Shown here: piece by piece, positions 5,442-59,752 of the stretch
Layout: each line of letters opens with the position of its first letter
Position numbering within the stretch: position 1 is the first letter of the stretch
Assembly: GCA_053919585.1 (NCBI GenBank)
Contig: CM132786.1
Direction: 5' to 3' (one strand)
DNA from: Euprymna scolopes
Taxonomy: Eukaryota
DNA length: 64,000 bases
Position numbers and translations under genes: made by a program
The notes under the pieces: generated by a model
What the model saw: the letters and a program-made list of their open reading frames with translations, nothing else
What the model was told of the DNA's origin: nothing
The model's database searches: none

Positions 5442-5641
5442 GTATGTCGATGACTAAAAATATATTTTATAAAGCTCCCCTCTTTGGTAGAGCACTCTCG
5501 TAAATTATCTTACTCGCTACTTAATTTAGCTGAAATAATGCGAAGCTCGCGCTTTGTTTACAAACAAACGTTTGAGCCCTCTACGAGTGGCGAACGGATG
5601 TTTATTTAAATAGACGTCCGGACAGTTTAATTTCGGCCACC

Positions 5642-5713
5642 GATTCCGTAGTCAGGGGGTAGGACTGCCGACTGTCATCACGACGGTTCTAGGTTCGATC
5701 CTCGGCTTGGGAG
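5642..5713 (+). promoter_or_regulatory. tRNA-derived (Asp-like) internal Pol III promoter
   Basis: A-box-like tagtcagggggtagg, anticodon-arm-like gactGTCatc, canonical B box ggttcgatcc (5692-5701), 3' gggag as in tRNA-Asp. The cloverleaf is not intact. Confidence 0.7.
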
Positions 5714-5718
5714 AGGTG

Positions 5719-5779
5719 TTAGTCTAGCGGCACTGATGAGTTGTGAAACAACGAAACAGGTCTGTATGTCGATGACTAA
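5719..5779 (+). ncRNA. Type I hammerhead ribozyme (intact core)
   Basis: Stem I ttagtc-tag-cggca / tgtcg-at-gactaa; CTGATGA 5733-5739; stem II GTTG-tgaaa-CAAC; GAAA 5753-5756; stem III ACAG-gt-CTGT; predicted cleavage after GUA (A5766). Confidence 0.92.
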
Positions 5780-5782
5780 AAA

Positions 5783-5842
<60 letters not shown>

Positions 5843-5849
<7 letters not shown>

Positions 5850-6030
5850 ATATGGCGACTAAGCTACACTGAATATTCTGCGTTTCATCCACTGTAGGAT
5901 TCGTCATATATATTTTATGAATTACTAACTAGCTCTACCTACGTATTGAGCACTTTTGAAGTAAATACTTAAAGTTTACGCATAAATCTATACTTTCGTA
6001 TATTAAATTTATGTGAGTAAATGAAGTAGT
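5843..6030 (+). mobile_element. PLE 3'-end fragment (family 2) with inverted 5' arm carrying a partial hammerhead, between (TA)n tracts
   Basis: Minus strand 5861-5906 reads TGACGA-ATCC-tacagt-GGAT-GAAAC-gcagaatattcagt-GTA-gctt. Plus strand 5907-6030 is homologous to 33091-33198 and to 59501-59625 (minus). Confidence 0.75.
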
Positions 6031-6061
<31 letters not shown>

Positions 6062-6124
6062 CCTTATTGATTTGTGCTCTGTTCATTGTTTCGTGTGTCA
6101 ATAACTTGCATATTTTAATTTGTG

Positions 6125-6352
6125 TACAAGCTTTCTTAGAGCTGCACGCCTGTAGAACTCTGTTCCGTCTGCCTGCTTCCCACCGGACTACAACTTGGAT
6201 GTCTTCAAGTCCAACGTAAACAAATTCCTAATGAACCGCCCCCTTAAGTAAACACTTCATCAAATCTCCACACTAACGTAATGTACTTGCAATAACCCTA
6301 TCCCTGATAGGCTTCCGGGCCTTGATAAGTGGTGATCACCGTGTAAAAAAAA
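6125..6352 (+). mobile_element. CR1-like LINE 3' fragment
   Basis: Translates FLRAARL*NSVPSACFPPDYNLDVFKSNVNKF, followed by the shared 3'UTR and an A-tail. Homologous to 35184-35411 (minus). Confidence 0.75.
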
Positions 6353-6505
6353 GCAGACATACTTCAGAATAACTATAACTTAACGAGTTAAAATGTATTT
6401 GGTCTTGATAAATTTAAAAGAATGTATTTACATTATTTTGGAATGTTCTACATTATGTTTACTTTTTTTTAGATTTTAATAGTTTTATTTTCTACGTCAC
6501 CGGCA

Positions 6506-7350
6506 TTTTTTTTTTTTTACATGGTAGTCACAACTTATACAACGCTCGGAAGCCACTCGGGGATAAGGGTTATTGCGTATACAGTAATTAATGGGATAAT
6601 ATCGCGGTAATCCTTAGTAAAGGAGATTTGGTAAAGTGACTTATTTAAGGTAGCGGTTTATCAGAAATTTGTTGATGTTTGACTTAAAGACATCCAATTT
6701 GTAGTCAAGTGGAAAACAGCCAAACGGAAGTGTTCCACAGGCGTGCACTTCTAAGGAGGAGCTTTGTTCATGGAATCTACGTTTTGATTAAGGCACAGAT
6801 AAAGAGTGGGGAAGATTACTGAAAGTGGTTTCAGCTAGACGGCTTTTTTAGTAAAAGCTTGGCAAGGGGGGACCAGAGATTGGAACTCGGGCGAGCACTT
6901 GCCATGGAAATAACGATAAAACAAAGATAGGCTCACAACGTCTCTTCTGTCGGAGAGAGATCGCAGGGAAGAGAAAACGGGCATCCTCCACTAAGACACA
7001 AAGTCTATTTTGGCATCTGTCAATGCAGGATCGGCTGTTTTTAGCAGCTCCCAGATGTGGCAGCAGTACTCCATCTTTGGACGTACTTGGCTTTTATATA
7101 GATAGAGAATTGCATCAGCAGTGAGATATCTTCTGGGGCGGTAGGAGAACCCTACTATTTTTTCCAGCGACCTTTGCAACAGATTTTATGTACGTGTTCC
7201 ATTTCAGATCAGGAGTAAAGGTCGATCCCAGAAGCTTGCCAAAACATAGAGCCTTCCCAAGACGAGAGCGATTAATTTCAATTGATGCCCGATAGGGATC
7301 AGAGCGTTGGTGATGGAAAAATAGGAGCTTGGTTTTAGATGCATTAAAAG
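6506..7350 (-). mobile_element. CR1-like LINE 3' portion (decayed ORF2 C-terminus)
   Basis: ORF 6991-7179 LYLYKSQVRPKMEYCCHIW motif; downstream WNTSVWLFS.DYKLDVFKSNINKF; poly-T (A-tail) at about 6506-6518. Confidence 0.8.
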
Positions 7351-8269
7351 TAAATAAAACGGATGCGGTCGGATATCATGTTACCTTGATTAGCAAATCA
7401 AATAATAAGAGAAAAGCACTTCAATTGCTAAAAACTGATATGTCGGCAAAATTGTAGGGTAGAAACTCACATTTTTTACCACATTCCACTACACACCGGA
7501 AGTCGTCTTCTGGAGTTTCCAGTATTGCCATTGGTATGTGCTCATTCTCTTTCCCGTCGTGCATGTTATTAAGGAAAAGGGATTTTTTACCTAAATGCGA
7601 ATTGGGAATAATTTTCCGTTTGACCAATTTGGTACCCCTATAAGAGGAGTGTCATGTATATTGTTTTTAAATTCTTATTTTATTATTTAATTTTTATATT
7701 TTACAAACAATATATATATATATATATATATATGTACATATATACAAGCAGAATCACTCAGATAACGATATAACATTCTCAAAGAACAAGATATTCTTAC
7801 AAATAGGACAAAACAATACTTCAAATGTCGTTCAAATTGTAGTGAAAAGTAATCGTTTTGTCCGTCACCGAAATTAACGTTGTGAAAACCGCATTCGAAA
7901 ATTATATTATATACTAAGAAAATAAACCGGTAAGAGTCATTATTTTCTAATCAAATAGATCTAACATTCTCTCAGAAAAATAGACGTAAAGTTTTTCAAC
8001 GAACAGCATTTAATATAATTGAGAAAATAAGAGCTGGTATTAGAGAAAAAAGTGTTTGGGGAGTTAATACATTTTCCCCTTGAAAAAATTCTACAACTTC
8101 AAAGAACTTATGCTGCAGATATTTCAACAATAAGAAAATGCCGAAAACAGATAACAAAAAGCTGAAGAAAGGCAAGAGAAAATGGAAGAATGATTGTTCC
8201 ATCAACATTAAAAACTACAAAAACAACAGATTTAACAACATCAGTAAATAAAAAACCACATATTCACCA

Positions 8270-9073
8270 ACAAGAAATGCAAAAAATCAAGAATTATTTC
8301 TCAATGAACTAAACAATGAACATGACATAGCGTTTTCAAAGAACACAATACCGGACAAAGTAGATTGCTTTATATAATTTCCGATGATGCCTAAACGTTC
8401 GATGATTTCTTTAGAAGGTTAAAGACTTTTGTACAGTCGATCGCTAAGACTTGCATGATACGAAAGTATTCGTCTCCTTTTACGAAAGCTAGGAACTTTA
8501 GGACACAACAGGTTCGTGAACTACATCCTACATAAAACGACCAAGGCACTAGAGATCGCGGAAATCGTTAATTTCTAATCAGTAGCAATACAACACCTCC
8601 ATATAAAGAGATGGTTTAATTTGGCGAAGCGGGACGACCAATATTATTTAGTGTTCGCATCCGTTGTAAAATGTACTGTATTGACTTTGGTCTAGCAAAC
8701 GATTATGGCAGATTATTTAAAAAGTATCACATTTGATCACTGACCTTCTGTCGGCAGACAAAATGGGATTAGATGAAAGTTACTTGCGAAACTCGAAAGC
8801 GAGCCCAATTCAACTCTACAGGAATTACGTGAAAGATCACTATTTGCCAAGACCTGAAGTCCACTAGGTGTTAGGTAGATGGCGAGACAAAAATACCAGC
8901 CATGGGGAAACTTGGGTTAAATGTTAATTTGGTATTAACACACTTCCCCTTGTGCTGATGAATAGAGTGTATATAAAAAAGGTGATATCGTCTTTAAAAC
9001 CATGTACAAAAACTTAAGTTATTATTGATTGAATTCTAGAAACATAAATTGTAATGGATTAATTTCGATTACC

Positions 9074-9075
<2 letters not shown>
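8270..9075 (+). mobile_element. Decayed Gypsy-like gag remnant
   Basis: Fragmentary translation RLLLRKLG..H.RFVNYIL, DDQYYLVFASV, LLAKLESEPN resembles Gypsy gag N-terminal regions; many stops and frameshifts. Confidence 0.45.
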
Positions 9076-9118
<43 letters not shown>

Positions 9119-9217
9119 TACATAGGTTTAATAAGTATGTTGAGATACACTTAAGCAAAAGTTAAACACACATTAATTTTTTCGGAAATGAATCATCAAT
9201 AAAGGTGAAAGTTTTTA

Positions 9218-9260
9218 TTCCGACGAGTTTCAAAGAAATACTTTCTTTTCGTCAGTGGGA
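9218..9260 (-). ncRNA. Minimal type I hammerhead (PLE-type), weak stem I
   Basis: Minus strand: tccca-CTGACGA-AAAG-aaagtattt-CTTT-GAAAC-tc-GTC-ggaa; about 100 nt upstream of a (TA)n tract (9078-9116). Confidence 0.65.
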
Positions 9261-9617
9261 AGGAGTAAACATAATGCATTAATAATATATAAAAATATTG
9301 AAAGCAAGAAAGTTTACTTGTAAAATATTGAAAGCAACCCAATATAAAAAAGGATCATACTAGCGTGGAAGTGAAATGTAGAATAATCAAACAGATGGAG
9401 AGGTGTAAACATAAAAATATGGTTTCGCGTAAGAGCATGTTTCCATAGTTGTTAAGCCCAAAATCAGTGAATTCGGGAACGTGGTAGAAATAAAATAGCC
9501 ATGTTTATAGTAGTCCGAGCCAGTCGTTAGAAATTATAAATGGATCAAAAAATAACTATCTCAGTGGATAGGCACAAATGAATAAGTCAATTCTGTGAGA
9601 TCATCCAAATATATATA

Positions 9618-9739
9618 CCGTACTTTGGGGTAATTCCGCCAACTAAAAGAAAGTGGTATTTATATGCGTGGTTGCCAAAAGGTCACGTTTAGCAAGTTTG
9701 CGCAATTACCACGGACTTGGCCCAACTACCTCAAAGTAC

Positions 9740-9741
<2 letters not shown>
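9618..9741. mobile_element. Tc1/mariner-pogo-type MITE
   Basis: TIRs ccgtactttggggtaatt / aactacctcaaagtacgg, flanked by TA on both sides; 124 bp. Confidence 0.8.
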
Positions 9742-9811
<70 letters not shown>

Positions 9812-9813
<2 letters not shown>

Positions 9814-10124
9814 GAAAATTACAATTGAAAATGATCCAAGATGGTAAAATTAAAGTAAATTATAAATATTAAAGAATAAATATTTATAAAATTATCTCAG
9901 CCAGATATAAAAGCTCGATAATACCAAATAGGAAATAGAGCTTATAATATGAGCAAACAGTTAATGAAATATGTTAAAAAACACTTTGAAATGAGTTAAA
10001 ATATATTTAATCTGAAAAGGAAACACTAGATGAGCCATTACCATTTATCTACTGTTTCCTTTTCAGATTAAATATGTTTTAACTCATTTCAAAGTGTTTT
10101 TTAACATATTTCATTAACTGTTTG

Positions 10125-10131
<7 letters not shown>
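9812..10131 (-). repeat. (TA)n-flanked insert with 85-bp inverted repeat (probable PLE end with inverted arm)
   Basis: Arms 9947-10031 and 10047-10131 (2 mismatches, 15-nt spacer). One arm continues into an AAGCTC-N21-GAGCTT hairpin (9911-9943) and a 135-nt tail. Confidence 0.7.
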
Positions 10132-10174
<43 letters not shown>

Positions 10175-10299
10175 TGATCGCCCAGGGTTGCCCTGTCTTT
10201 AAACATGCTTAAATATTATATTTAAATGCATGTATATTTGGTATTTATTATTATAGGGCAATTCCCTATCAATAACAATATTGTACTTTATACATTGTA

Positions 10300-11760
10300 G
10301 TGATTCAAAATGGAAAATATGACTTGTGAAATATTGACAAAAGTGATTGTAAAATCAGATGAATCCGACGTAGCCTATGCCAGAAAAGTAAAGTATACAT
10401 CTAAATATCATTACCCTAAAAAGATTAAAGAATATGCCCAAAACCAAAAGTAACCCTAAAAAGGTAACTGAGAAGATGCCTTCCATCATTTCCAAAAGGA
10501 GCGGATCATGCAGAAAGAAAAGACATCATCCGCAACACCATATAGTCCATGTACAGAATTACATTGTAAAATAAACTTGTCAAAATTCTGTCAATCCTGG
10601 TCATAAAATACCGCATTGTAGAAGCAAACGTACAAAACTAGAGTTAGGCAGTAAAACAATATGGAAAGTCCTAAAAATTTAGGCAATTTCGTAAAATGTA
10701 AGCAATAAGACAAATTACATTTGCAGAAAATACAAAAGCCATCATGCAAGTTGGTTGGCAAGAAGATTAATTTTATTGGATTATTATATTTACCAGTAAA
10801 TTCGAACGGTAATATTAATCTATTTGGTGTGAAGTTATAAACATTAGAATTTACCAACCAACACTTTTTCACTATGGAATTACGTAAGAAACAAAAGGTT
10901 ATCATACGCAATTTCTTCTAAACCAAACTGTTTACGAAAAAAAATTCTTATCAAGTGAATTACATACAACTAATCAACGAAGATATTAAGACATAAAGCA
11001 CGGGATTCGAAACCGCCTAAAAAAGCATAGTAATAATTGAAACAAATGAAAGAAAAGAAAATCGTCACAAATGTAGTTCTATAAAAAGGAAATTATTCTT
11101 AAAAGCAAACAAACATTTTTAAATGTTCAGAAAAAAATAAGAAAATACCAAATCCGCCCAAATCGTAAGTACGATTCATAAATACTAACATGATCCGACG
11201 ATACCAGTTACAAAAATTTCAGTTTCTTTGTAGAAACATAGACACATTAATTTACTAAATATGTGCAGCGGAATTCAAACCTCATTCAGAAAGTAATTAT
11301 TTATATTGCAAAAGAAAAGCAAACCTAAAATTAAATTGTAAGACATTGGCGATACCGGGTATAACATACAAGATACGATACATACTTATAAACGCCCCCC
11401 CCCCAAAAAAAAATCAATTGAAAAACGTCACTCAGATGATACCAAAGACACATTACTGGAGGAGGAAAAGCCTATGTGCGCCATTTTTATACGACCAACA
11501 CTAATCAACCCTAGAAAAACGAGGATCGGATAAAATGAGAAAATTCAACGACCCGCTGATTATCGACTTAAAAGGATAATATATTAGCCAGATTTCTTAC
11601 GCTGTAAAAGGGCTTAGGAGAGGTGTGTTTCGGAAGCTCACCCACCCACAAGATAGGAACTCTACCTCACTTTATAAATAAAACAAATTATACCGACTCT
11701 AATGGTGCGTATACTTCGTCGTACACACCACTCCAGGTTCTAACCTAAATAATCAATCCG
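10300..11760 (+). mobile_element. Decayed, internally deleted Gypsy-like remnant (zinc knuckle/protease-like, integrase tail, PPT)
   Basis: TCQNSVNPGHKIPHCRSK knuckle-like segment, GKKINFIGLLYLPV..NLFGV, NQLKKRH-like integrase tail, purine tract aaaagggcttaggagagg followed by TGT at about 11606-11626. Confidence 0.35.
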
Positions 11761-11939
11761 ACAGAAACTGGGCTGTTTCAGTGGTCCAACTGATGTAACT
11801 ATTTTGTGCTGCCTTTTTGTGTTCTGTATAATGTTTTATTCTAAATAGAATTCACCTTACTTCTCATGAATATCCGTATCCGTTTTATCCTTGGTAACCC
11901 TTCTTTGCCACAAAATCTTAACGACGATGAACTTAAATT

Positions 11940-12640
11940 CACAAAAGGGGATATTCACAACAGTTTTGGTTTTAATCTTGCTCAATTTTGCATATTCTCA
12001 AGTTTTAAAGTCGATAGATAAGTGGTTAAATCATTCTACCGTTCCAGTAAATATCTCACTGCCGACGCAATCTTCTAGTTGTATAAGAGCAAAATACGTC
12101 CTAGGATGGAATAATGTTGCCACATATAGACAGAAACTGCACGGAGCTCTCATATTTCCTTAACAAAGTTCAAAACTGACTTCGCAACCTAGTAGATGAT
12201 GTATTTTTCTATTCGCCGCAACATCTTTGCCACAGAAAATATGTCTCGAGTTTGTCTCAATTCCATCGTTATTTCCATGGCAAGTGCCTGTCTGAGAACC
12301 AAAATATATTCTCCCCGTCAATATTTAAAAAAAACATTCGTCTAGCTTAACTCACTATCAGTAATTTTCTCTACTCTCTATGTGTGCCTTAAACTAAACG
12401 TGGGTTCTATGAACAAATCTTTTTTACTTGGAACTTCGCGCCGGTGGAACTCTGTTTCGCTGGTTTGCTTTTCAGATAACTAAAATATGGTTGTCTTCAA
12501 GTCAAACGAAAACAACTTCTGGTTGTACTGTCCTCTTAAATCTAATTATACCTAATATTCACGACTGCGCTATTGCCTTAATGATTAACAGACATACATT
12601 AACCCGTATACTCGATTGGTGACCTCCTATAAAGAAGGTG
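11940..12640 (+). mobile_element. CR1-like LINE 3' fragment, highly decayed
   Basis: Homologous to 6506-7350 (IRPRME*CCHI; WNSVSLVCF; VFKSN). Confidence 0.65.
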
Positions 12641-13835: not shown

Positions 13836-13915
13836 TCAAGACAATCTAGGGACCAATACCTTTCAGGTAACGAACAATTTTTTCAGCTCGGTGCATCCGC
13901 TAAAGATTTTTATTC

Positions 13916-24650: not shown

Positions 24651-24689
<39 letters not shown>

Positions 24690-24716
24690 TATTAATTTTA
24701 TTTATACAAACATTAA

Positions 24717-24780
24717 TGGCTACATATGTGCATACATGTTTCTGTAATCACCCACGTTGGGGGATTACGTCTTCAGGCCA
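24717..24780 (-). ncRNA. Type I hammerhead ribozyme (inverted copy of 27775-27838)
   Basis: tggc-CTGAAGA-cGTAATC..GATTACa-GAAA-CATGTatgcacATATG-TA-gcca on the minus strand. Confidence 0.85.
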
Positions 24781-27774: not shown

Positions 27775-27838
27775 TGGCCTGAAGACGTAATCCCCCAACG
27801 TGGGTGATTACAGAAACATGTATGCACATATGTAGCCA
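27775..27838 (+). ncRNA. Type I hammerhead ribozyme
   Basis: Stem I TGGC/GCCA; CTGAAGA 27779-27785; long stem II GTAATC-cCCCA-acg-TGGGt-GATTAC with a C-A mismatch at the first pair; GAAA 27813-27816; stem III ACATGT/ATATGT; cleavage after GUA (A27834). Confidence 0.85.
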
Positions 27839-28149
27839 TTAATGTTTGTATAAATAAAATTAATATACCTGCTCTGTTCACTCATTGAGCACTATTTTGG
27901 TAGACACGTGTTGTTTCATTGGATGTACTTCTAGGAAACTAAACTCTACTGGCTATATATATATAAATATATATATATATGATTTCAATTTGATAGAAAT
28001 AGAAGATAATGAATTTAAAGAGGGTTATACGGTCTTACTTTTTTTAAGACTGAATGCAAAGATTTCAAAACACTACAATTGTATTACATATTAGAATTTG
28101 CTACCTACAAAACCCGCATGTTTTTACGTTTGAAATTGGACAGAAAAGA

Positions 28150-32227: not shown

Positions 32228-32919
32228 TAAAATAAAAAAAAATGAGGAATAAAAGTGATATAGAAATTCATTTTATAATCAGATCAATATAGAAGGAAAA
32301 TTATGAAAAAGAAGAAAACCTTCCGTGACCAATATGGTGTAAGGACAGTGTGCCTAAAATCTGCAGTGAATAAAACAGCATACAATAAAGTTTGTATGAT
32401 AATAACATTCGCAAATACACTTGTCATGTAAAGCTGCGTAAGAATTTGAAAATCGCCTGTTCATTCATTTATTGCATGATTTCGGTTATTGAGCATGAAC
32501 GTTTATCTGAGACCTTCTCAAACCAATCTACGAAGACTGGCAGATGCATGAGGTGCCTTAGTGTGAAATTTCATAAAACAAACTGGCCCAAGTCTTTCGA
32601 GTCCGTAGAGAGCGAACTTACACANNNNNNNNNNNNNNNNNNNNNNNNNNNNNNNNNNNNNNNNNNNNNNNNNNNNNNNNNNNNNNNNNNNNNNNNNNNN
32701 NNNNNNNNNNNNNNNNNNNNNNNNNNNNNNNNNNNNNNNNNNNNNNNNNNNNNNNNNNNNAAAATAAAGTCAAATAAAACAACTAGCAAAAAAAAACAAC
32801 ATTTAACCTAGATTTAAAATAGGTCAGGACAATAGATATATATACTCCCCGCTAAAAGAGCACGCACCGAGGAACTGGTGAACCAGAGGTAAACTGGGAA
32901 TTTGTCCTGTAAGTGCATG

Positions 32920-33006
32920 CTCATTGGCTTACTAGGAAGGTTGCGGTGGAAACTATAAAGCTTATTGGCTAACTAAAAACTCAATAGAAGATGCGTATAT
33001 AAAAAC
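32920..33006 (+). promoter_or_regulatory. Candidate Pol II promoter (two inverted CCAAT boxes plus TATA box)
   Basis: tcattggct (about 32921) and ttattggct (about 32962), then gtatataaaaac (32996-33006) about 30 nt before hammerhead stem I. Confidence 0.45.
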
Positions 33007-33032
33007 GCGAGACAACCACAAAATTCTCGCAT

Positions 33033-33083
33033 AAGCCTGAGGAATCCTAGCGTGAATGAAACGCAGAATATTCTGTGTAGCAT
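33033..33083 (+). ncRNA. Type I hammerhead with palindromic stem III (dimer-type)
   Basis: aagc-CTGAGGA-ATCC-tagcgt-GAAT-GAAA-cgcagaatattctgtg-TA-gcat; single mismatches in stems I and II relative to the 59677 copy. Confidence 0.75.
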
Positions 33084-35127
33084 AATCATCATATATATAT
33101 TTTATAACTTACTACCTAGCTCTACCTACGTATTGAGCACTGTTGTAGTAAATACTTCAAGTTTACGCATGAATTTATACTTTCCTATATTAATTTATNN
33201 NNNNNNNNNNNNNNNNNNNNNNNNNNNNNNNNNNNNNNNNNNNNNNNNNNNNNNNNNNNNNNNNNNNNNNNNNNNNNNNNNNNNNNNNNNNNNNNNNNNN
33301 NNNNNNNNNNNNNNNNNNNNNNNNNNNNNNNNNNNNNNNNNNNNNNNNNNNNNNNAAATTATTAAAAACAATATAATCTGATTAAAGTACAAAATAGCAA
33401 AAAGAAAAAGAGAAAGGTAAAAAAAATGCAGTAGAACCCCGGATTACAAATTAATAACAAAGTACAGTGTATTATGTTATACACATATATATAATCAAAT
33501 AGAATTATAGATAACACTGTTAGGCGAAGCAAATGCAATAGTGGAAAAAGCATCCTATACCACCTCGTACTTGAGAACATAGTATCCTCGTATCCTCCTT
33601 AAACCTGATATTTCAGTTTATGCAGATTGCGTATGTAATATTATAGAATCAATCTTCTATTGCATATCATATATTTCAAGAAATAATTTGCCCGGTGGAC
33701 TAAGTTACAACAACAACAAAAACAGCAAACAACAAACAACAACAACAACAACAACAATAATAATAATAATAATAATAATGACGTGTATCAAATGCGTGTT
33801 TACAATATCACGTCAATTGATATTTGGGCTTGAGGATGAATGTCCTGGAATGTCACTTCTGATTAATGTATAGTTATCAAATATACAAACGAAGTAATGA
33901 TTTGCAGAGATTTGAAATGGCAATCTTCTGTTATCACGAGTTGAGTCATAAAGAAATAAAATAAAATTGTGAGGTTTGAACAAGGAGGTGGGGGGTCATT
34001 CGATCTATATTCGAATGCTCCTATACTGACCTCTATTTTTGCAAGTGTCAATAATTCTTCTTTTTGTTTTGCTTGAGAAAAAATGATTTGTTAAGATTTT
34101 GTTATCTCTTTTGTAAGTGTCTGTCGTGACCGACAATGCTATAAAGATCCAAACTATGGTGTCTTGGATCGACGTATTTTGATTTAAAAAAAAAAATTTT
34201 TTTAGATTTTTATCTCATCTCTCTCTTTCCTGGGGAACATTTTGGCTCGCCAGCAATCCCGATCCCAGGATAATGCTGTCCATTGGTCATATTCCACAGC
34301 AAAATCCCTGAGATCTCGCTTTAGCCCGGCCCTGAATCTAAGACGCGGACACCATGTAATACATTGTGAACTAGGCGTTCACATGACATTCGGTTTACAG
34401 AGCCTGCCCACCGAAGTTTCATAATTTTCTTTATTGGGGAGGGGGTGTCAACGGCCAACTAGCACCGTATATATATGTCAGGTCAGGAGTCCAACTCCTG
34501 TTTCTTGTACCATGTAACCCGCTATTACCTGTGTCATAACGTGCCAGCAGTGTTGTCCTCTTCACTAATACCGACCTGGTGCCTGGCGCTGCGCTGCACC
34601 TCTCAAGGTTGGGTGGTCCCTTCTGTGTTGCGGTTGTAACGTAAAATATACCCTGTAAAATTATTTTTATCTATAAAAAGAAAAAATATTTTTTTAGAAT
34701 ATGATTTTTTCGATTTTCTATAATTATCAGATGAATGTCTTTACTAAACGTATCTGAGAACACTGTTAGATACATAAACTACGTTTGTGTTAAATTTGCA
34801 AAAGATTGGCTCAGTCGTTCCGGAAAACATGTACCAGAAACGTACACACCCACACACACACACAAATTAATAATAGAGATATGAAGGTACATATAAAAAA
34901 TGGAGAACCGGGATAGAGGAAGGCGAAGATAAAAAAGAAGGAAAAAATTAAGGTAAATGAAAAAATGTAGGTGGAGTGACTGTAGACATGAGAAATTTGG
35001 CGTAATTAAAGACTTGCAAATGTCACAATGAAAGATGAATAAAGTATAGCGAAGGTAAACTAAATATGGAAGACGGCAGTGTATAATATAATAGGGGAGT
35101 GTCTTTAACGGCCAGGCAATGGGTGTT

Positions 35128-52496: not shown

Positions 52497-52545
<49 letters not shown>

Positions 52546-55500
52546 CTTGTTTCCCCAATGGATCTTCTATATCTTCCGTTTGTTGTGCTTGCTGAAATCA
52601 CTTTCTCTTTCATTCTCTTAAAAATTATATTAATTAATGGCCACCTAAATCGCAATTAACCGAAGTATAAATAACTGAATAGTTTCCCTGCAAACTTTCT
52701 CCAGATTTACAATCAAATTTCTCTTGGGGACAGAACTTGTTCATTGCGAATATATTTCTTTGCAAATATGTCGCAACATTTTCAGTAAGTACTGTTCGGC
52801 AATTTAATATTGGAAAACATTTTTTTCATTTCCGTTTTTTTTTTTTTCACGTACTGCTCTTGGCTGCTCTTATACTGTTTCATTTGTTCGACGATTGTTT
52901 GTTTATGTTTTTTTAGGCAAAAAGAAGGATATGGTTTTTAAGATATTTTAGTGGAAGGATATTTCAGTCATACGTCAATGATGTTTATTGAAAAAACAGA
53001 AGGTTAAATTTTGTTGTTTTTTTTTGCTAAAAAAGAAAAAAAGTAACGTCTGTAACGTCATAAAGTGAGCGAAATAAACATAACATTCCTTTGCATTAAA
53101 ATAAAACCGGCACTTTAGTAAAAGAAATTCAATAGAGAATGTTTCCCAAGACAAAAACGAAGATTATGAGTCTTAATAAAATATAAGGAAAATACAGACA
53201 CCCACGCTGATAATGATTTTTTTCCCAAATCAGTTGAGCGGAATTGTGAAAATGTTCGTTGCAAACATAAAGATAATATTGTCACTTGGTCATTGGCAAT
53301 GGAAGTATATATTTTATACAATGACTAAGGAATTGCTTGAAATATTTTCTGATATCAACGACATATTTGGTGTCGTCAAAGAAATGTTTTAGAAATACGG
53401 TTTTATTTAGAAATAAGGTATTTTTTCTACCCTAAGACTAATTTTAAGGTAAACAGTTCCTTTGACTGTAGGCAGTAAAAAAAACTAAAATTAGAATTCC
53501 GTTCGATCAATAAATGAAAAATTTGTTCAAATTTGAAACACTTGAGACGATATTGCGATGTCTAATAATATGTACGGATTTGAAAATAGGGAATTTACCA
53601 TTTTCTGCGTTACAAAAGTTTCTTAAACTAAAAAATAGCAATACAAGCATTGTATTTAAACAAAAGATTTGAAATTACTGTACTATTGATTTGGCACAGA
53701 AATAAAATTTCATTTGCTAGAATATTGAAGTATGTGCAGTCACACACACACACAGACACACACACACACACAGACACACACACACACACGGGCGTTCGTG
53801 CGCAAATAAACGAACCTTTATTCATTTCAATTTTCCCCGCGCATTTTGTACCAAAAATAGATTTTGTCAGCAACGACACAATTTCAAATACGCCCACACA
53901 CTTTTCTCAAAACAACAAAAGTAAAATGAACATATTTTTGGCGGACGTAGTTGAAGACAGCATTATGTGACACAAGTAACCAATGAGAAAATTAAGAAGA
54001 TTGTCTTTTTAACGCTTTTCCAAAAAACAAAATATCAGCAGGAGCAGACGTATTCTGGAACCGGTCCAAAATGTATAAAACGCATCAAATAGTCTTCTAC
54101 GGAGAGAGCTCTGGGTTTTTTCCCCCTTTTTTCTCGATTCGACGACACAACGAGAACATGCCTCTCGCGTTCACAACATCGTCGCTGCCAACACCGCCAG
54201 CACCATGATACACACGCCACGCGGATACTCAAAAATCACTTATGCACACACGCATTCATACCGCATATTTTCTAAATTAATAACAACAAATCACTTTCCT
54301 CAAGATTTACTTTCCTCATGGGACTTTTTAAGTAAGGCGAACTTCGCCAGATAAACACAACCTTTAAAATAATCTCATCTCTGGAATTTAACCTTCTAAA
54401 CTCATTAATTCCACGAAGAACTTTAATCTAACATTTTAATCATAATGACTTCGAAAGAACTTTCACCAATCGGACCTTTCTTTATTCATTTTATTGCTTT
54501 TGTTAAAAAACAAATGCGCTGAACTTAAATCAGAAAGAGTTGTTTTGTTTCATTCCTTTTTTATTATTAGGAAATTTAATTTTACTTAAAGTTCTGCAAC
54601 CCTATATAGTTTGTTCCAATTCTGATTATTAGTAGATTAAGAGATCTATGCATATTTATAGAGATGCATTCATAGCAATCAAAAATTATCTTAATTTTGA
54701 AGAAGTAAAGCACATGGTAATTAATCGAAAAATCCCCACTTTTGGGTCAATCTTATTCAGTTTTCGAAAACTCGTCAGTGTGAAAAATCACATTTACAAC
54801 CTAACTATTCCGACCCCTGCTCTGAGGAAGTTAAGGCAGTGGGATTAATAATCTTACTTACAATGTTAGTTCAACATTTTCGAAAAATTTTTTTTATAAT
54901 CACAACTTACATCACAGTAATCATTGTTCAATTCCAACAGTTATGCTTTTCATCGCCAGTCTAACACGTTAGTATTGCTTGACGAAGCCTTGAACTTTCC
55001 AAATAAATTGATGCAGATACATCAGAAGATTAGACCTGGAAGTACAACAAAAATACCTAGAAATATTAAAAGTAATATAAAACTGAAGTCTCATAAAACC
55101 ATACAACAAATGTGATATCTATCTAGTCGCTCACAAAACCATGTTTAACTATGTAAAGACCATGCAAAATACTCATGTGGAGTACATTATAGATAAAGTC
55201 GCTACGTTTTGTTAGAACAAGTAGCATGTTTATTTGTTTGTTTGTTTTATTTGTTTGTTTGTTTGTTTGTTTTTTTTGTTTAAACCAGCATATCGATCTT
55301 TTTGAGTCATTTAATTCTGTATATAAAATTTAAATTTGTAAATGCTTTCGGGGTTGATTTTCACTGGGTTTATTCGAGTATATTTTGATATTGTTTTTTT
55401 TATGGAATTTAGATTTTATTGTAAAGTTCTGCTTTCTTAAGAAGATTAGAACGGTTTTAGATTTTTCTCACCGAGTTATTTTAAATTGTTGGCCTTGTAG

Positions 55501-56494
55501 ACGTGTATAAGAATGCGTGTGATGTCATAGCAGTCAAGTAAAACGCTTTTCACTGTATAATGTTTATGACATCCAGAAGTGATTTAGTTTTTTCTCTCTA
55601 GTTTGATTGGCGAGAATTAGATTTAGTATATATTGTCACGTCTAGTATGGCTTTGGTTTGTGAATAGCATTTCTGTCAAAATTTCCTCGTGGATACTGGT
55701 TTGATCTATTTGTCCACGATGTACAGCTCTTAAAAACACTAATGGTATTTATAAAACGCCACACATTGCACGTAACCCCTACCAAACACTTTCAAAGTTT
55801 TGAAATGAAAAACTATTAGAAATATAAGATTTTATCTTTAAAAGATTGTATCTATTATTACATGCAATAAAGAGGAAATATTTTACTGGATAAACAAAAG
55901 AACGCACATTGAATAGTTCTTTTCTGTTACATGAGTGCTTAATTATATGCCACTCTTACTGTCTTTTGCTAATAATTCATATGCAACCTGAAGCTCCTAA
56001 CATGCTGGTAAATGATATGACGTCAGTTCTTTCCCTCATTAACACATTTATTTTCTTCTCTATCACTTACGTACAGCAAAACTCTTTCAACTCTCTTTGA
56101 AAACATGTATGTCTCCTGTTAGCTGTGAATGAACTGCCGAGCGCAAAATTTTGAAATCTTGAGGGATTTATATTTATGGATTCTACTTAGCCTATAAGCG
56201 TTACTCGTTTGAAATGGAATAGAATTATTAGGAACCGCTAGATTAAAATGAAAGCATTTTTTTGTTTGCTTTCTTGCTTTCTTATGTGCAAATATGCGCC
56301 AAGTTTAATAACAGTCGCTATAGTTGTGGGATTTCTAATTTCAGTGTAAAACGCTCAACATTTCTAGCTAAAGCTGCGATAGAATGCAACAGCTACTCTC
56401 TTGTATTAGTCTTACACACACACACACACACACAAATGTATATATGTGTGTGTGTGTGTGAGTGCGTGTGTGTGTGTGTGTGTGTGTGGTGATA

Positions 56495-57397
56495 CCTGTA
56501 AGAGATAAGTTCCCATACATTTTTCGTAAGGAAACTTTTATTGATAATGCACACAAGAAACTCTAGCCCACTTCGAAGTAATCTCCTTCGGATGCATTGC
56601 ACTGGATTTACCGTTACAATAACTTCTGCAAGGCCCCATGGCAGTTCTCTTGTGTGAGCGTGTCAATGCCACAGCCTCTTTCATCTACTCAATTGTGTCA
56701 TATCGAGGGCCTAAAGGTTCTCTTTGGGCTAAAGACATAACCAAAAGGTCTGGAATATAGGAAGGAGTTACTGTCTTAATTGACATCTTGGTCAAATAAT
56801 CTGTGACAAGGAGGTATTGTGCACTGATGAATTGGGACAAACTATCAACAAATCTTCCGCATCTTTAGTCCATTCAAAATAATGAAGTGTACACTTTCTA
56901 CACTGACACCAATCTGTGCAATTAATGTCTAAATAGACACACGGCTGTCCTTATCTATGAACTTTATTATTTAATGTTTAAATTTCCACTCTCCATCAAC
57001 AGCTCTCATCAGCTCTCGCATAGTCCCTGCCTTTCAGGAATGTTTTATGCAACTCAAAAACCGATGCTCGATTCATGCAAGATGATCCAAATGTAACCTA
57101 AAGCATTCCATATTTTTCTGTGCTATTTATTTCAAAGTTTAAAACAGAATTTTTTTGAATATCGTTTTTTGAAGTGTCCTCATGTCCAGAATTCATTTTT
57201 AAAATTCAGCAACTTTGACAATCGGGCGTTAGTATGATGTATTCCAGTTCCTGCGGTAGCTGTTCTTGTGAACCTAAAATCATAAAAATTGGCCAGTCAT
57301 CTCATCTATGGCAATACGATATTGAATTTTTCAGAATCTACAACGATTAATAATGCCTGTATCAAAGAAGCCTGGGAACATTGAAGGTAGGTCGTAT
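56495..57397 (-). mobile_element. Mariner-like transposon remnant
   Basis: Minus translation LVTDYLTKMSIKTVTPSYIPDL..RYDTIE.MKEAV..QCNASEGDYFE (mariner C-terminus). Confidence 0.65.
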
Positions 57398-57632
57398 ATA
57401 TTTTAAATAAAATACTTTTCAAAAATATATCACCTGCGTCGTATGACGCATCAGCGCCGCTGAACCAAAGGAAAATCAAACCCAGGATCTCAGGGTTCTG
57501 CTTCTTGCGCCACTGAGCCCATTCTCGCCACTTACAAATTCGCCCTATGTTTAGTTTTTATTAGTTGTCTTTTCTTTAATAATTTTTCCTGTGATTCATT
57601 TTTGAGCGGATCTCCCCCTCTTTCTCTCTCTT

Positions 57633-57669
<37 letters not shown>

Positions 57670-57721
57670 ACATATATATATATTATATGTATATATAAAA
57701 AAATATTTATTTATCTATATA

Positions 57722-58599
57722 TTAGCATGGGTGCCTAGCGTTGCCCGGGTGTGTGGAAGTGTATGTTGAGCAAAAAAAAGGGGATTTTTTTAAAACTTTT
57801 AATCCTATTATGACATTTTAACATTTATTCTTTTGGGCTCAAATGAGGTGATTAAGTTAGATTCATATCCAAATGACCTATATCTAAAATGTCAAGTGTT
57901 TAGAACCCAAATTGTCGGAGGAGTTTGGTATATTTTTCAAAGGTCAACCCGTTGAACTTTGACCTCTTAACAGCTAAATTTCTGGCCGAAAACCGATCAC
58001 ATAGATTTTCCCAAATCTCAGTACCCTGTATATCAAATTTCGAGTTTGTAGACTAAAAATTGTCAGAGTTATTGCGTAGGGGAATGTACACAGACAGACA
58101 CACACATACACACACACATACACACACACACATGTTCACTTTTATAGATATACTAGCATGGGTGCCCGGCGTTGCCCGGGTGTTTGGAAGTGTACGCTTA
58201 GCAAAAAAAAATAACAAACAACAAAACGGTAATTTTTTTTTTTAATTTTGACCACAATTATGACCCCTTAAGATTTATTGTTTTGGACTCAAATAAAGTT
58301 ATTAAGTTAGGTCTATGTCCAAGGAAACTATATCTAAAATTTCAAGTGTTTAAACACAAATTGTCGAAGGAATTTGGTAGAGATCTCAAAGGTCAACCCG
58401 TTGAACTCTGACCCCTTTAACAGCGAAATTTCTGGTCGAAAACCGATCACATAGATTTTCCCAAATCTCAGTACCCTGTATATCAAATTTCGAGTTTGTA
58501 GACTAAAAATTGGCAGAGTTATTGCGTAGAGAAATTTACACAGACAGACACACACACAGACACACAGATACACAGACTTACAGACACCTTCACTTTTAT
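57722..58599 (-). mobile_element. Head-to-tail tandem of two Helitron-like units (period 431 bp)
   Basis: Units 57722-58148 and 58153-58599 (ends in a gap). Minus strand 5' TCTATAAAAGTGAA plus (TG)n/(TGTC)n; 3' hairpin cccgggcaacgccggg-cacccatg-CTAG|T. Confidence 0.8.
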
Positions 58600-59450
58600 N
58601 NNNNNNNNNNNNNNNNNNNNNNNNNNNNNNNNNNNNNNNNNNNNNNNNNNNNNNNNNNNNNNNNNNNNNNNNNNNNNNNNNNNNNNNNNNNNNNNNNNNN
58701 NNNNNNNNNNNNNNNNNNNNNNNNNNNNNNNNNNNNNNNNNNNNNNNNNNNNNNNNNNNNNNNNNNNNNNNNNNNNNNNNNNNAAATGGCTAATGGAGGA
58801 AGTTAATAAAAAATCTACAAAATAGGCCTTAAAAACTATAATTAAGAATTAAGGATCTCTTTCTTGATCGACTTCACTCAGGCTGTTTTCTTATGTTTGT
58901 TTTTTGTTTTTTTTGTTTTTTTGCATTTAGACAGATTTTACTCACCTTTAAACTATATGCATTCTGTAATTTTTATTTTTCTATAAAGTGGTTATTTCTC
59001 ATTTCTTTTCTGATGAAACCCCGCCAAAGTGTTTCTTAAAATAGATTAAGAAACCGGATTCAAAAGTAGTTTATAAATGAACAGGTTTAGAATTAAAGTG
59101 ATTTTCTTTTCTGTAAATAGTAGGTTAGTCTAAGGAAAATGTTAAATGTGTTTCATCCGTTCGACAAAATGGTGTTTCCTTTAGTTACATTTTGACATCT
59201 CAGCCAATATTTTATTTATTTATTCATTCTAATACATTTTTATTTAGCTGAGTCAGTGTATGCACAAAATAAAGTACTGCCAGTAATGTAATCAATGGGT
59301 TTATGGCGAGTAAGGGAAACCTTATATATACGCATGCATAAAATAGAATAAATTAAGAAAAATCAGTATCATAATAGTAGGGCAAATGCAAAACTTCATA
59401 TAAGGGAGGTAAATCTCCAATCACTTAGAATGTGGGTCACGCATAATATG

Positions 59451-59500
<50 letters not shown>

Positions 59501-59504
<4 letters not shown>

Positions 59505-59752
59505 ATTCATTTGCTCACATAAATTAATATACGAAAGTATAAATTTATGCGTAACCTTTAAGTATTTACTTCAACAGTGCTCAATACGTTGGTAGAGCTA
59601 GTTAGTAAGTTATAAAATATATATGCGATTAAGCTATACTGGATATTACGCGTTTCATCCACACTAGGATTAGTCATAAGCCTGAAGAATCCGATAGTGG
59701 ATGAAACGCGGAATATTCAGTGTAGCTTAATCGCCATGTATATTTTATAACT
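59501..59752 (-). mobile_element. PLE 3'-end fragment (family 2) with inverted arm, between (TA)n tracts
   Basis: Palindromic arrangement around about 59677: decayed hammerhead on the minus strand (59631-59676), intact one on the plus strand; tail homologous to 5907-6030. Confidence 0.8.
59677..59729 (+). ncRNA. Type I hammerhead ribozyme (intact core)
   Basis: TAAGC-CTGAAGA-ATCC-gatagt-GGAT-GAAA-cgcggaatattcagtg-TA-GCTTA; cleavage after GUA (A59724). Confidence 0.88.

What the first reader, a model, noticed from the sequence alone, without database searches (positions are those of the whole stretch)
5474..59598. Shared GCTC-N12-GAGCACT signal downstream of the hammerhead in three dissimilar (TA)n-inserted element families
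Seen: exact GCTC-[12 nt]-GAGCACT at 5474-5496 (retrozyme; spacer ccctctttggta), at 5932-5954, 33119-33141 and 59576-59598 minus (family 2; tacc(t/a)acgtatt), and at 27871-27893 (family 3; tgttcactcatt). The families differ in hammerhead stems and surrounding sequence. The motif nevertheless lies about 30-40 nt 3' of the GUA cleavage site, just after a TATA-like stretch. Flanks and spacer length are conserved while spacer sequence is free, which fits either a 4-bp GCTC/GAGC hairpin with a fixed loop or a spaced palindromic protein-binding site. Inference: a cis-acting recognition element for a PLE RT/GIY-YIG machine, copied by the non-autonomous retrozyme. I do not recognise it as a described motif, but I cannot search the literature.
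Basis: partly seen in the sequence, partly recalled or inferred. Interest (0 to 1): 0.8.

Follow-up and report, generated by a model that had tools for sequence, protein, structure and literature searches.

The report
Conserved hairpin marking Penelope-element copy starts
A short conserved RNA hairpin (GCUC-loop-GAGCACU) lies a few bases past the point where Penelope-like jumping genes of this mollusc genome, and the ribozyme-bearing elements that ride on them, begin to be copied into DNA, so it is the best candidate for the signal their reverse transcriptase recognises.

Summary
All five exact GCTC-N12-GAGCACT copies are present, against 0.01 expected. The whole 5.9-Gb genome holds 88,558, against 362 for the reversed control.

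"Family 2" is not a separate family. It is the 3' end of an autonomous Penelope-like element (PLE) with a roughly 780-codon ORF carrying RT and GIY-YIG motifs. That element has the motif twice: an N12 form 37 nt after its hammerhead, and an N11 form 8 nt from the 5' end of its body.

The spacer is not free. It forms an upper stem next to a 2-nt 3' bulge, with compensatory changes across 32 hairpins from this genome, related metagenome PLEs and the bivalve Solemya velum.

The main new result concerns element ends:
- PLE arms end either with a roughly 125-nt tail or exactly 4-6 nt upstream of the hairpin (16,638 junctions).
- Retrozyme arrays end 2 nt upstream of theirs (122 ends).
- Family 3 and 4 short arms end 3 nt upstream.

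This parallels the two internal reverse-transcription start sites shown in vitro for the Anolis PLE (Frangieh 2024).

The most likely reading is a cis RNA signal for PLE reverse-transcription initiation, borrowed by non-autonomous elements. The evidence is indirect and genomic. It is a new variant of a known kind. Earlier scan notes described these elements but not this motif.

The parts
5379..5438 (.). (TA)n tract to the left of the retrozyme copy (target microsatellite).
5440..5789 (+). Retrozyme copy of about 1.08 units (unit about 323 nt). It starts 5 nt before a hammerhead cut site. It ends at ...TTTTATA, about 2 nt before the place where the next hairpin would begin.
   Evidence: The same end is seen 122 times genome-wide.
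5474..5496 (+). Retrozyme hairpin: GCTC, spacer CCCTCTTTGGTA, GAGCACT. The upper stem is CC/GG and the bulge is TA. It lies 29 nt after the cut site.
5733..5766 (+). Retrozyme type-I hammerhead (CTGATGA, helix II, GAAAC, helix III, GTA). The cut falls after 5766.
   Evidence: Rfam gives only a weak match of 18.6 bits.
5844..5905 (-). Inverted short arm of a PLE-tail insertion (family 2). It has no hairpin and no tail.
5906..6030 (+). Forward arm of the same insertion. It holds the hairpin at 5932-5954 and a tail that ends in (TA)n at 6031-6058.
24688..24776 (-). Family-3 copy with a hammerhead at 24721-24776. It ends at ...AATTAATATA, followed by (TA)n at 24652-24685. That is 3-7 nt before the place where the hairpin would begin, so it is the tail-less form.
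27779..27834 (+). Family-3 hammerhead-like motif (CTGAAGA ... GAAAC ... GTA). The 10.1-11.1 position of helix II is a C-A mismatch.
   Evidence: Rfam does not report it.
27871..27953 (+). Family-3 hairpin (27871-27893, spacer TGTTCACTCATT) plus a 60-nt tail that ends in (TA)n.
32761..33198 (+). 5'-incomplete 3' end of the PLE: 3' UTR, hammerhead at 33037-33079, hairpin at 33119-33141. The tail is cut off by the assembly gap at 33199.
59502..59680 (-). PLE-tail insertion on the minus strand. It holds a decayed hammerhead at 59637-59680 (CTTATGA core), the hairpin at 59576-59598, and a tail that ends at (TA)n 59456-59501.
59722..59751 (+). Outer end of the inverted short arm of the 59.6-kb insertion. 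It ends about 10 nt before the hairpin position and runs into (TA)n.

Best explanation
**What it is (shown).** The motif is a small RNA stem-loop of one lineage of Penelope-like elements (PLEs). It has:
- a lower stem GCUC/GAGC;
- a 2-nt bulge on the 3' side (UU, UA or UC);
- an upper stem of 1-7 bp that varies by compensatory change;
- a G-poor loop;
- a following ACU;
- usually a short UA-rich tract 2-8 nt upstream.

**Where it sits (shown).** The autonomous element has two copies about 107 nt apart (start to start). One is in the tail, 37 nt after the hammerhead cut. The other is 8 nt inside the 5' end of the coding body, which follows that tail in tandem (pseudo-LTR) copies.

**What it does (inferred).** The PLE RT/GIY-YIG protein binds this stem-loop on the element's RNA. 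It then starts target-primed reverse transcription a few bases upstream of the stem-loop, with the UA tract lying against the nicked (TA)n target. Starting before the first hairpin gives insertions without a tail. Starting at the tail's end, which in tandem RNA lies just before the second hairpin, gives insertions with the roughly 125-nt tail.

**Why other elements carry it (inferred).** Retrozymes and the other protein-less families keep the stem-loop because they need it to borrow the enzyme.
For: **1. The autonomous element carries the motif.**
- ORFs of 778-782 open codons show a YRDDG motif, a Cys-rich linker and a GIY-YIG signature.
- Atlas look-alike clusters carry GIY-YIG and RVT_1.
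- The N12 hairpin is in the tail and the N11 hairpin is at the body's 5' end.
- Tandem junctions are seen in L047, L053 and L058.

**2. The motif is an island of conservation.** The flanks of family 2, family 3 and the retrozyme are no more alike than shuffles (z at most 2). Only families 3 and 4 are homologous along their whole length.

**3. The structure is supported by covariation.**
- On 11 N12 hairpins, 94.8% of cells pair, 3 pairs show compensatory changes, and the covariation score is 0.26 against 0.106 (0 of 500 shuffles reach it). Slid controls pair in only 8-56% of cells.
- On 32 hairpins from all sources, the first three upper pairs form in 31, 27 and 21 cases, and only in the 2-nt-bulge register. 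Shuffle P is 0.0001, below 0.0001 and 0.01.

**4. Element ends lie just upstream of the hairpin.**
- Of 44,158 arms holding the anchor ATATTTTATAAATTAC, 16,638 run straight into (TA)n, 4-6 nt before GCTC.
- Only 1,415 arms end in the internal (AT)4 run 20 nt further upstream, although that run offers better microhomology.
- 122 retrozyme array ends lie 2 nt before the hairpin, against 247 internal units.
- Family 3 and 4 short arms end 3 nt before it.
- Full-length copies L044 and L045 end at this site, while L046 and L031 end with the tail.
- Tails end sharply at GAAGTAGT. In 2 of the first 100 they run on into TATACTTA plus the N11 hairpin.

**5. The architecture is kept in other organisms.** The order is hammerhead, 35-50 nt, hairpin 1, about 100 nt, hairpin 2, 30-55 nt, ATG, or a short tail plus (TA)n.
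- It is seen in PLE relatives at 39-51% protein identity.
- It is seen in Solemya velum, which also has a short arm ending 4-6 nt before the hairpin.
- It is seen in 8 low-GC metagenome contigs.

**6. There is an experimental precedent.** The Anolis PLE starts reverse transcription internally at two adjacent sites in an AC-rich stem-loop downstream of its hammerhead. The optional tail is the stretch between those sites (PMC11167929).
Against: - No binding or reverse-transcription data exist for this motif.
- The hairpin is weak: -3.9 to -7.1 kcal/mol, z -0.5 to -2.7. The upper stem appears in the minimum-energy fold of only 7 of 14 sequences.
- The Anolis element has no GAGCAC motif, and its start sites lie inside the loop, not upstream of the stem.
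- For family 3, the tail end is followed by a hairpin only once in the genome. The with-tail terminus therefore need not depend on a downstream hairpin. It could come from priming on read-through (UA)n.
- Only about 2% of family-2 tails run on into the N11 hairpin.
- Related sequences are not independent, so the shuffle P values overstate the covariation.
- A promoter role or a DNA-level role was not tested.
- The available RNA runs are contigs only and show no RNA ends.
Confidence: 0.55

Rival explanations
1. Core promoter element. The TATA-like stretch or the flanking (TA)n, together with GAGCACT as an initiator-like site, would drive transcription from the pseudo-LTR and from solo copies landed in (TA)n.
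For: - An AT-rich, TATA-like tract lies 0-22 nt upstream of every copy.
- The N11 copy lies 8 nt from the 5' end of the coding body and about 55 nt before the ATG.
- In Drosophila Penelope and in Chlamys-3_cRei the transcription start lies in the pseudo-LTR (PMC8557442).
Against: - Compensatory changes and a spacer of 11-30 nt point to an RNA fold, not a fixed DNA site.
- The distance from TATA to motif is not fixed.
- The motif's 5' edge coincides with insertion 3' ends, which a promoter does not predict.
- No transcription-start data could be obtained.
Confidence: 0.12
2. DNA-level site. The GCTC...GAGC dyad in double-stranded DNA would be recognised by the dimeric PLE protein (its GIY-YIG nuclease or its zinc-finger-like linker). 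That would direct cleavage next to existing copies and so build tandem and inverted structures.
For: - The half-sites are palindromic.
- The Drosophila Penelope nuclease was reported to need the tail sequence to recognise and cut its substrate, and the Anolis protein is predicted to be a dimer (PMC11167929).
- Tandem and inverted arrangements are common here.
Against: - The half-site spacing varies from 11 to 30 bp.
- The bases between the half-sites covary as pairs, which only matters for a single strand.
- Arms that end before the hairpin are followed by (TA)n and then unrelated DNA, not by a second element.
Confidence: 0.12
3. The ends are set by microhomology alone, between the (TA)n target and the short UA tract. 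The hairpin would then serve something else, such as RNA stability, packaging, or holding back or helping hammerhead folding.
For: - Every terminus falls in a TA or TATA run that is shared with the target.
- The Anolis hammerhead cuts only with protein present, so nearby RNA folding matters.
Against: - An 8-nt perfect TA run 20 nt upstream is used about 12 times less often than the 2-nt TA next to the hairpin (1,415 against 16,638).
- The same offset of 2-8 nt recurs in unrelated families and in other species.
Confidence: 0.1
4. A remnant of a tRNA D-arm, or a Pol III box A, carried by tRNA-derived SINE-like elements.
For: - GCUC/GAGC is the commonest tRNA D-stem (own knowledge).
- Some copies have UA before the stem and A after it, and the retrozyme reads TTGGTAGAGCACT.
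- Earlier scan notes report tRNA-like A and B boxes in hammerhead elements of this genome.
Against: - ARAGORN finds no tRNA in the window, and Rfam finds no tRNA match.
- Most spacers lack the GG of a D-loop, and spacers reach 30 nt.
- No box B lies at the right distance. The retrozyme's GGTTCGATCC sits about 220 nt away, in a separate tRNA-like piece.
- The retrozyme hairpin matches hairpin 2 of a distant PLE (L085), which has no tRNA context.
Confidence: 0.03
5. Plain shared ancestry or chance, with no function.
For: All carriers belong to one broad group of elements, and families 3 and 4 are homologous along their whole length.
Against: - The enrichment is about 245-fold over the control.
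- The flanks have diverged beyond alignment while the motif is exact.
- The changes in the stem are compensatory.
- The motif is kept in elements whose proteins are only 39-51% identical, and in a bivalve.
Confidence: 0.03

Closest known systems
Internal reverse-transcription start sites and the 'tail' of the Anolis Poseidon element PAc (Frangieh et al. 2024, PMC11167929)
   Same: - Both lie downstream of the hammerhead, in the pseudo-LTR or unit-start region.
- Both have two alternative cDNA start sites that bound an optional tail.
- Both have a stem-loop with an A/C-rich, G-poor loop at the start region.
- Both use an AT-rich target.
- In both, the tail is often present at only one end of an insertion.
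   Different: - There is no sequence likeness, and PAc has no GAGCAC.
- The PAc tail is about 34 nt and lies inside the ORF. Here it is about 125 nt (30-95 nt after the hairpin in other families) and lies in untranslated sequence.
- PAc starts are inside the loop. Here the ends lie 2-8 nt upstream of the stem.
- This motif is conserved in sequence across families and species and occurs twice per element.
Stem-loops in LINE 3' ends that partner SINEs copy (for example eel UnaL2/UnaSINE1), and the R2 3' UTR (own knowledge, not tested here)
   Same: An autonomous element and its non-autonomous riders share a short conserved RNA structure near the point where target-primed reverse transcription begins.
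   Different: In those cases the structure lies inside the copied 3' end. Here, for the tail-less form, it lies just beyond the start point and is not copied. The enzyme here is of the PLE/telomerase-like clade with a GIY-YIG nuclease.
Metazoan non-LTR retrozymes (Cervera & de la Pena 2020, PMC7229834; Li et al. 2026, bioRxiv 10.64898/2026.07.22.740005)
   Same: The 323-nt tandem unit with one type-I hammerhead matches the kind. A derivation from PLE pseudo-LTRs has been proposed for vertebrate retrozymes.
   Different: Those papers name no shared motif beyond the hammerhead. Here a defined hairpin links the retrozyme to the PLE, and retrozyme arrays end at a fixed point beside it.
Telomerase RNA template with neighbouring protein-bound helices, and the telomere-complement tracts next to hammerheads in EN-minus PLEs (Athena/Coprina; PMC8557442)
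   Same: In both, a short tract complementary to the DNA 3' end sits beside a structured RNA element and is used by an RT of the telomerase/PLE clade.
   Different: This is an analogy only. No repeat addition or template boundary was shown here.
tRNA D-arm / Pol III box A
   Same: The 4-bp stem GCUC/GAGC with a following A.
   Different: There is no tRNA fold and no box B at the right spacing. The loop pairs internally and varies from 11 to 30 nt.

Membership tests
Canonical EN+ Penelope-like element (carrier of the motif) | A single ORF with a reverse transcriptase followed by a C-terminal GIY-YIG nuclease | tested here: inconclusive
   - Open frames of 778-782 codons hold YRDDG, a Cys-rich linker, a VY...YIG...R...H...E...N pattern and an inner C-x2-C, all invariant in 14 relatives.
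- Atlas look-alike clusters carry PF01541 (GIY-YIG) and PF00078 (RVT_1).
- Pfam, NCBIfam and a PDB profile search give no significant match.
Canonical EN+ Penelope-like element (carrier of the motif) | A hammerhead ribozyme near the 3' end or in the pseudo-LTR | tested here: met
   A manual descriptor finds CUGANGA, helix II of 4 bp, GAAA, helix III, GUA and helix I of 5 bp in 13 family-2 copies, with the cut 37 nt before the motif. Rfam models do not report it.
Canonical EN+ Penelope-like element (carrier of the motif) | Partial tandems (pseudo-LTR), inverted 5' copies, an optional tail, and a bias to (TA)n targets | tested here: met
   - Tandem junctions: L047, L053, L058.
- Inverted 5' arms: L045, L046.
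- Ends with and without the tail.
- (TA)n at every end.
PLE reverse-transcription initiation stem-loop (as in Anolis PAc) | It lies downstream of the hammerhead cut and coincides with insertion 3' ends (tail boundaries) | tested here: met
   The motif lies 29-50 nt after the cut. There are 16,638 PLE junctions 4-6 nt upstream of it, 122 retrozyme ends 2 nt upstream, and family 3 and 4 arms ending 3 nt upstream.
PLE reverse-transcription initiation stem-loop (as in Anolis PAc) | cDNA starts inside an AC-rich loop | tested here: not met
   The ends lie upstream of the stem, not in the loop. The loops are G-poor (A 28%, C 26%, U 38%, G 8%) rather than strictly AC-rich.
PLE reverse-transcription initiation stem-loop (as in Anolis PAc) | The RNA segment is needed for protein-dependent cDNA synthesis | not testable with these tools
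   This needs the in-vitro assay of PMC11167929.
Metazoan non-LTR retrozyme (the 5440-5789 element) | Tandem repeats of a few hundred nt, each with a type-I hammerhead and no ORF | tested here: met
   Arrays are spaced 321-324 nt with up to about 31 units. The hammerhead is at 5733-5766. No ORF of 150 aa or more overlaps it.
Metazoan non-LTR retrozyme (the 5440-5789 element) | Expressed as circular RNA | tested here: inconclusive
   Contigs from RNA libraries cover the unit, but contigs cannot show circles or RNA ends, and no back-joint was listed.
tRNA / Pol III box A | A cloverleaf or A+B boxes at tRNA-like spacing | tested here: not met
   ARAGORN finds none. Rfam finds no tRNA match. The spacer is 11-30 nt with internal pairing.
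Rfam hammerhead families (RF00008, RF00163 and clan) | A score at or above the gathering threshold | tested here: not met
   No matches at gathering score. The best is 18.6 bits against a threshold of 48.5 for the retrozyme. Family 2 and family 3 give nothing even in short stretches.

The most novel reading that the evidence does not exclude
The UA tract plus the hairpin may work like a miniature telomerase RNA. The PLE reverse transcriptase, the sister group of telomerase RT, would hold the hairpin as an anchor or boundary and align the neighbouring UAUA with the nicked DNA end. That would explain the (TA)n target bias by base pairing. If the enzyme slips and recopies the tract, the element would itself lay down or lengthen the long (TA)n runs that flank nearly every copy. 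It would then be a source of this genome's (TA)n microsatellites rather than only a user of them.
Probability: 0.12. Interest if true: 0.85.

Novelty: new variant of a known kind. Interest (0 to 1): 0.6.

Why it matters
How Penelope-like elements choose where on their RNA to begin reverse transcription is known from a single in-vitro study of one lizard element, and no sequence rule has been described.

Here a defined, conserved sequence-and-structure motif sits beside the start sites in about 100,000 copies. It is shared by the autonomous element, several protein-less families and a retrozyme, and it recurs in other invertebrates.

This has four consequences:
- It gives a concrete, mutable target for binding and reverse-transcription assays.
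- It explains how retrozymes could borrow the PLE enzyme.
- It gives annotators a marker for the two kinds of PLE end.
- It offers a possible link to the way telomerase holds its RNA.

Tried and rejected
- **Rfam.** Five runs on the whole window and on short stretches. No hammerhead reached the gathering score, and many spurious miRNA matches fell on (TA)n.
- **tRNA search.** ARAGORN found none.
- **Protein libraries for the PLE ORF.** Pfam, NCBIfam and a PDB profile search gave no significant match.
- **First hammerhead script.** It found nothing because of a lazy-match bug and was replaced. The strict descriptor still misses family 3, which has a C-A mismatch at the base of helix II, and most decayed copies.
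- **RNA evidence.** All runs on offer are stored as contigs, so no transcript starts, ends or circles could be read. Contig breaks at 5922-5924 probably reflect the branch point between the two kinds of end and are not independent evidence.
- **Does the family-3 tail run on into a second hairpin in some copies?** Only one case exists in the genome, a junction with a retrozyme. The idea that every with-tail terminus is set by a downstream hairpin is therefore not supported for family 3.
- **Are hairpin-plus-tail units often 5'-bounded just before the hairpin?** Only a few cases were seen (L003, L011, L028), and these could be (TA)n expansions. The idea of RNA cleavage at that point was dropped.
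- **N11 count.** The 19,499 matches cannot be read at face value. Part of them comes from the coding sequence of an unrelated LINE.
- **Metagenome scan.** It was run by mistake with a 13-nt spacer. 72 of the 80 fetched contigs look like chance matches, and only the 8 with a (TA)n downstream were used.

Full report
**1. The observation**

The pattern GCTC-N12-GAGCACT occurs five times in the window, at the coordinates given, against 0.01 expected from shuffles. In the whole assembly (G000, 5.9 Gb; the window is C4:152396001-152460000) it occurs 88,558 times, against 362 for the reversed control. An N11 form occurs 19,499 times against 546.

None of the five copies touches an assembly gap. The gap at 33199 cuts the tail of the 33119 copy, 57 nt after the motif.

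Rfam reports no hammerhead at gathering score. Only the retrozyme ribozyme gets a weak match of 18.6 bits. Read by hand, the cores and helices are there. A scripted descriptor passes 13 family-2 copies with the cut site exactly 37 nt upstream of the motif. In the window the distances are 29 nt (retrozyme, tandem register), 36 nt (family 3) and 38-39 nt (the two other family-2 copies).

**2. What the carriers are**

"Family 2" is the 3' end of an autonomous Penelope-like element.
- Loci found through its GIY-YIG-bearing ORF hold open frames of 778-782 codons with a YRDDG motif, a Cys-rich linker and a GIY-YIG signature.
- Pfam and PDB searches give nothing significant.
- Atlas look-alike clusters carry GIY-YIG and RVT_1.
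- Relatives at 37-51% identity are plentiful, one of them in the bivalve Solemya velum.
- By the criteria quoted in PMC8557442, the C-x2-C-x2-C linker before the GIY-YIG suggests a Neptune-like clade. This is an inference.

The element's layout, 5' to 3', is as follows:
- TATACTTA;
- the N11 hairpin;
- about 55 nt, then the ATG and the ORF;
- about 100 nt;
- an internal (TA)n;
- about 300 nt;
- the hammerhead;
- 37 nt that include a TATA-like tract;
- the N12 hairpin;
- a tail;
- the (TA)n target.

Tandem junctions (L047, L053, L058) join the tail's end directly to TATACTTA plus the N11 hairpin, which puts the two hairpins 107 nt apart. L045 and L046 carry inverted 5' copies. These are the standard PLE arrangements.

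Other carriers are:
- family 3;
- an N11 sister family 4, which is homologous to family 3 throughout;
- about a dozen further short (TA)n-ended families;
- the 323-nt retrozyme, which forms arrays of up to about 31 units.

Part of the N11 count is an unrelated LINE coding sequence.

**3. Is it more than shared ancestry?**

The 36 nt upstream and 90 nt downstream of the motif are no more alike between family 2, family 3 and the retrozyme than shuffled sequence (z at most 2). Families 3 and 4 align throughout (z above 4). The motif is therefore an island of conservation.

**4. Structure**

The spacer is not free. With the last two spacer bases left as a bulge, the outer spacer bases pair.
- On 11 N12 hairpins, 94.8% of cells pair and three pairs show changes on both sides. 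The covariation score is 0.26 against 0.106 in shuffles (0 of 500 reach it). Slid registers pair in only 8-56% of cells.
- On 32 hairpins from this genome, related PLE contigs, Solemya and metagenome contigs, the first three upper pairs form in 31, 27 and 21 cases, with 2, 5 and 5 pair types. This holds only in the 2-nt-bulge register (an 18-family version is).
- Spacer length runs from 11 to 30 nt, the bulge is UU, UA or UC, and the loop is G-poor.

The fold is weak: -3.9 to -7.1 kcal/mol. The upper stem appears in 7 of 14 minimum-energy folds. Related sequences are not independent, so the shuffle figures overstate the case. Even so, several clearly separate compensatory changes exist (U-A to C-G; A-U to G-C, C-G and U-A; C-G to G-C and U-A).

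**5. The link to element ends**

Arms of the PLE end in one of two ways.

*With the tail.* The sequence ends sharply at ...GAAGTAGT followed by (TA)n. In 2 of the first 100 such tails (19,270 in all) it runs on as TATACTTA plus the N11 hairpin.

*Without the tail.* The sequence ends at ...TTTTATAAATTAC(TA) and then (TA)n, 4-6 nt before the GCTC of the N12 hairpin.
- In fetched loci, 16 of 44 arms end this way, including the full-length copies L044 and L045.
- By my count, so do about 44 of the first 100 arms genome-wide.
- There are 16,638 exact junctions among 44,158 arms with the anchor.
- An 8-nt perfect TA run 20 nt further upstream, which would pair better with a (TA)n target, is used only 1,415 times.
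- By my count, among the first 100 arms there are 14 divergent inverted pairs, and every one has one arm of each kind. This matches the published remark that the tail is often present at one end only.

The same rule holds elsewhere.
- Retrozyme arrays end at ...TTTTATA, 2 nt before the hairpin position. There are 122 such ends, typically one at the 3' end of a listed array, against 247 internal units. The window's copy is one of them.
- Family 3 and 4 short arms end 3 nt before the hairpin. One of them is in the window, at 24688-24776 on the minus strand.
- A Solemya velum element has a hammerhead, then 36 nt, an N12 hairpin with upper stem UCU/AGA, then 35 nt and (TA)n. Its inverted short arm stops 4-6 nt before the hairpin.

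**6. Conservation in other organisms**

- Contigs encoding PLE proteins 45-51% identical to this one (L077-L079, L083) carry, upstream of the ATG, a hammerhead where the contig reaches that far. Hairpin 1 follows (spacer 14-15 nt), then about 100 nt, then hairpin 2 (spacer 18 nt). GAGCACT and the 2-nt bulge are kept.
- A 39%-identical element (L085) has GAGCTCT. Its hairpin 2 closely resembles the retrozyme's hairpin. This also argues against a tRNA origin for the retrozyme copy.
- Two relatives at 41% identity (L080/L081 and L084) lack a clear motif.
- Eight low-GC metagenome contigs carry a canonical hammerhead, about 50 nt, an N13 hairpin with upper stem UAG/CUA, 26-57 nt and (TA)n.

**7. 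Mechanism**

Frangieh et al. (PMC11167929) showed the following for the Anolis element PAc:
- The purified protein starts reverse transcription internally.
- It starts at two adjacent sites in an AC-rich stem-loop about 85-92 nt after the hammerhead cut.
- A protein-binding motif must lie in that stretch.
- The optional tail is the segment between the two sites.

PAc has no GAGCAC motif.

The pattern found here is the same kind of thing in another PLE lineage, but now with a conserved, nameable RNA element. I therefore read the hairpin as the protein's recognition and positioning signal. cDNA synthesis would start a few bases upstream, at a UA tract that can lie against the (TA)n target. The retrozyme and the other protein-less families would keep the hairpin in order to use the enzyme.

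*Shown:* the motif, its fold register, its conservation and its fixed relation to insertion ends.
*Inferred:* protein binding and start-site selection.

*Weak points:*
- The with-tail terminus of family 3 is followed by a hairpin only once in the genome, and only 2% of PLE tails are. That terminus may simply be inherited with read-through (UA)n.
- The hairpin is thermodynamically weak.
- A promoter role or a DNA-site role is not excluded.
- The RNA runs on offer are contigs and show no ends.

**8. Novelty**

Full-text searches found no description of this motif. The PLE and retrozyme papers read name no shared element beyond the hammerhead.

Earlier notes of this scan describe the same elements in this genome: a PLE, mini-PLEs, hairpin-type insertions and tRNA-hammerhead units. 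None mentions GAGCACT.

I rate it a new variant of a known kind. It is a conserved stem-loop that bounds the tail, is duplicated within the element and is shared between elements. It belongs with the PAc initiation stem-loop and, more loosely, with LINE/SINE shared 3' stem-loops.

Noticed in passing
L049, L057, L076 (also L048, L051, L055 on the other strand): An abundant LINE family matches the N11 pattern by chance inside its coding sequence (GCTCTGACGAACTGCGAGCACT, reading ...CSDELRAL... near the C-terminus). This inflates the genome-wide N11 count.
   Followed up: partly
window 5640-5710: The retrozyme unit holds a decayed tRNA-like piece with a box-B-like GGTTCGATCC about 35 nt before its hammerhead. 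It is separate from the hairpin. ARAGORN does not call it.
   Followed up: partly
window 181-351: A U2 snRNA-like sequence, 36.5 bits, below Rfam's gathering score of 46. It is probably a decayed copy.
   Followed up: no
L044 5190-5233, L045 and L046 equivalents: The PLE has an internal (TA)n tract about 100 nt after its stop codon. The tract varies in length between copies and splits the 3' UTR in two.
   Followed up: no
L044 ORF, about residues 560-620 of the 763-aa frame: A poly-asparagine run lies in the linker between the RT and the nuclease. Its length differs between copies.
   Followed up: no
G000:C22:99513995-99514037: This is the only place in the genome where a family-3 tail end is followed within 14 nt by a hairpin, and that hairpin is the retrozyme's. 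It could be a chance neighbour or a chimeric template.
   Followed up: no
window 5922-5924 and 6006: Contigs from four runs (three RNA libraries and one of unrecorded type) repeatedly begin or end here, about 10 nt before the hairpin and inside the tail. This probably reflects assembly-graph branch points where tail-less and tailed copies diverge.
   Followed up: partly
L003 1380-1500 (minus orientation): A family-3 insertion in which an inverted hammerhead arm, a (TG/TA)n run and then only hairpin plus tail follow one another. It could be microsatellite growth at the pre-hairpin site or a separate tail-only copy.
   Followed up: no
L077 positions 24-45 and 229-250: A related metagenome PLE contig carries hairpin 1 in both orientations about 200 nt apart, so the inverted-arm architecture with the hairpin included is present in that organism too.
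   Followed up: no
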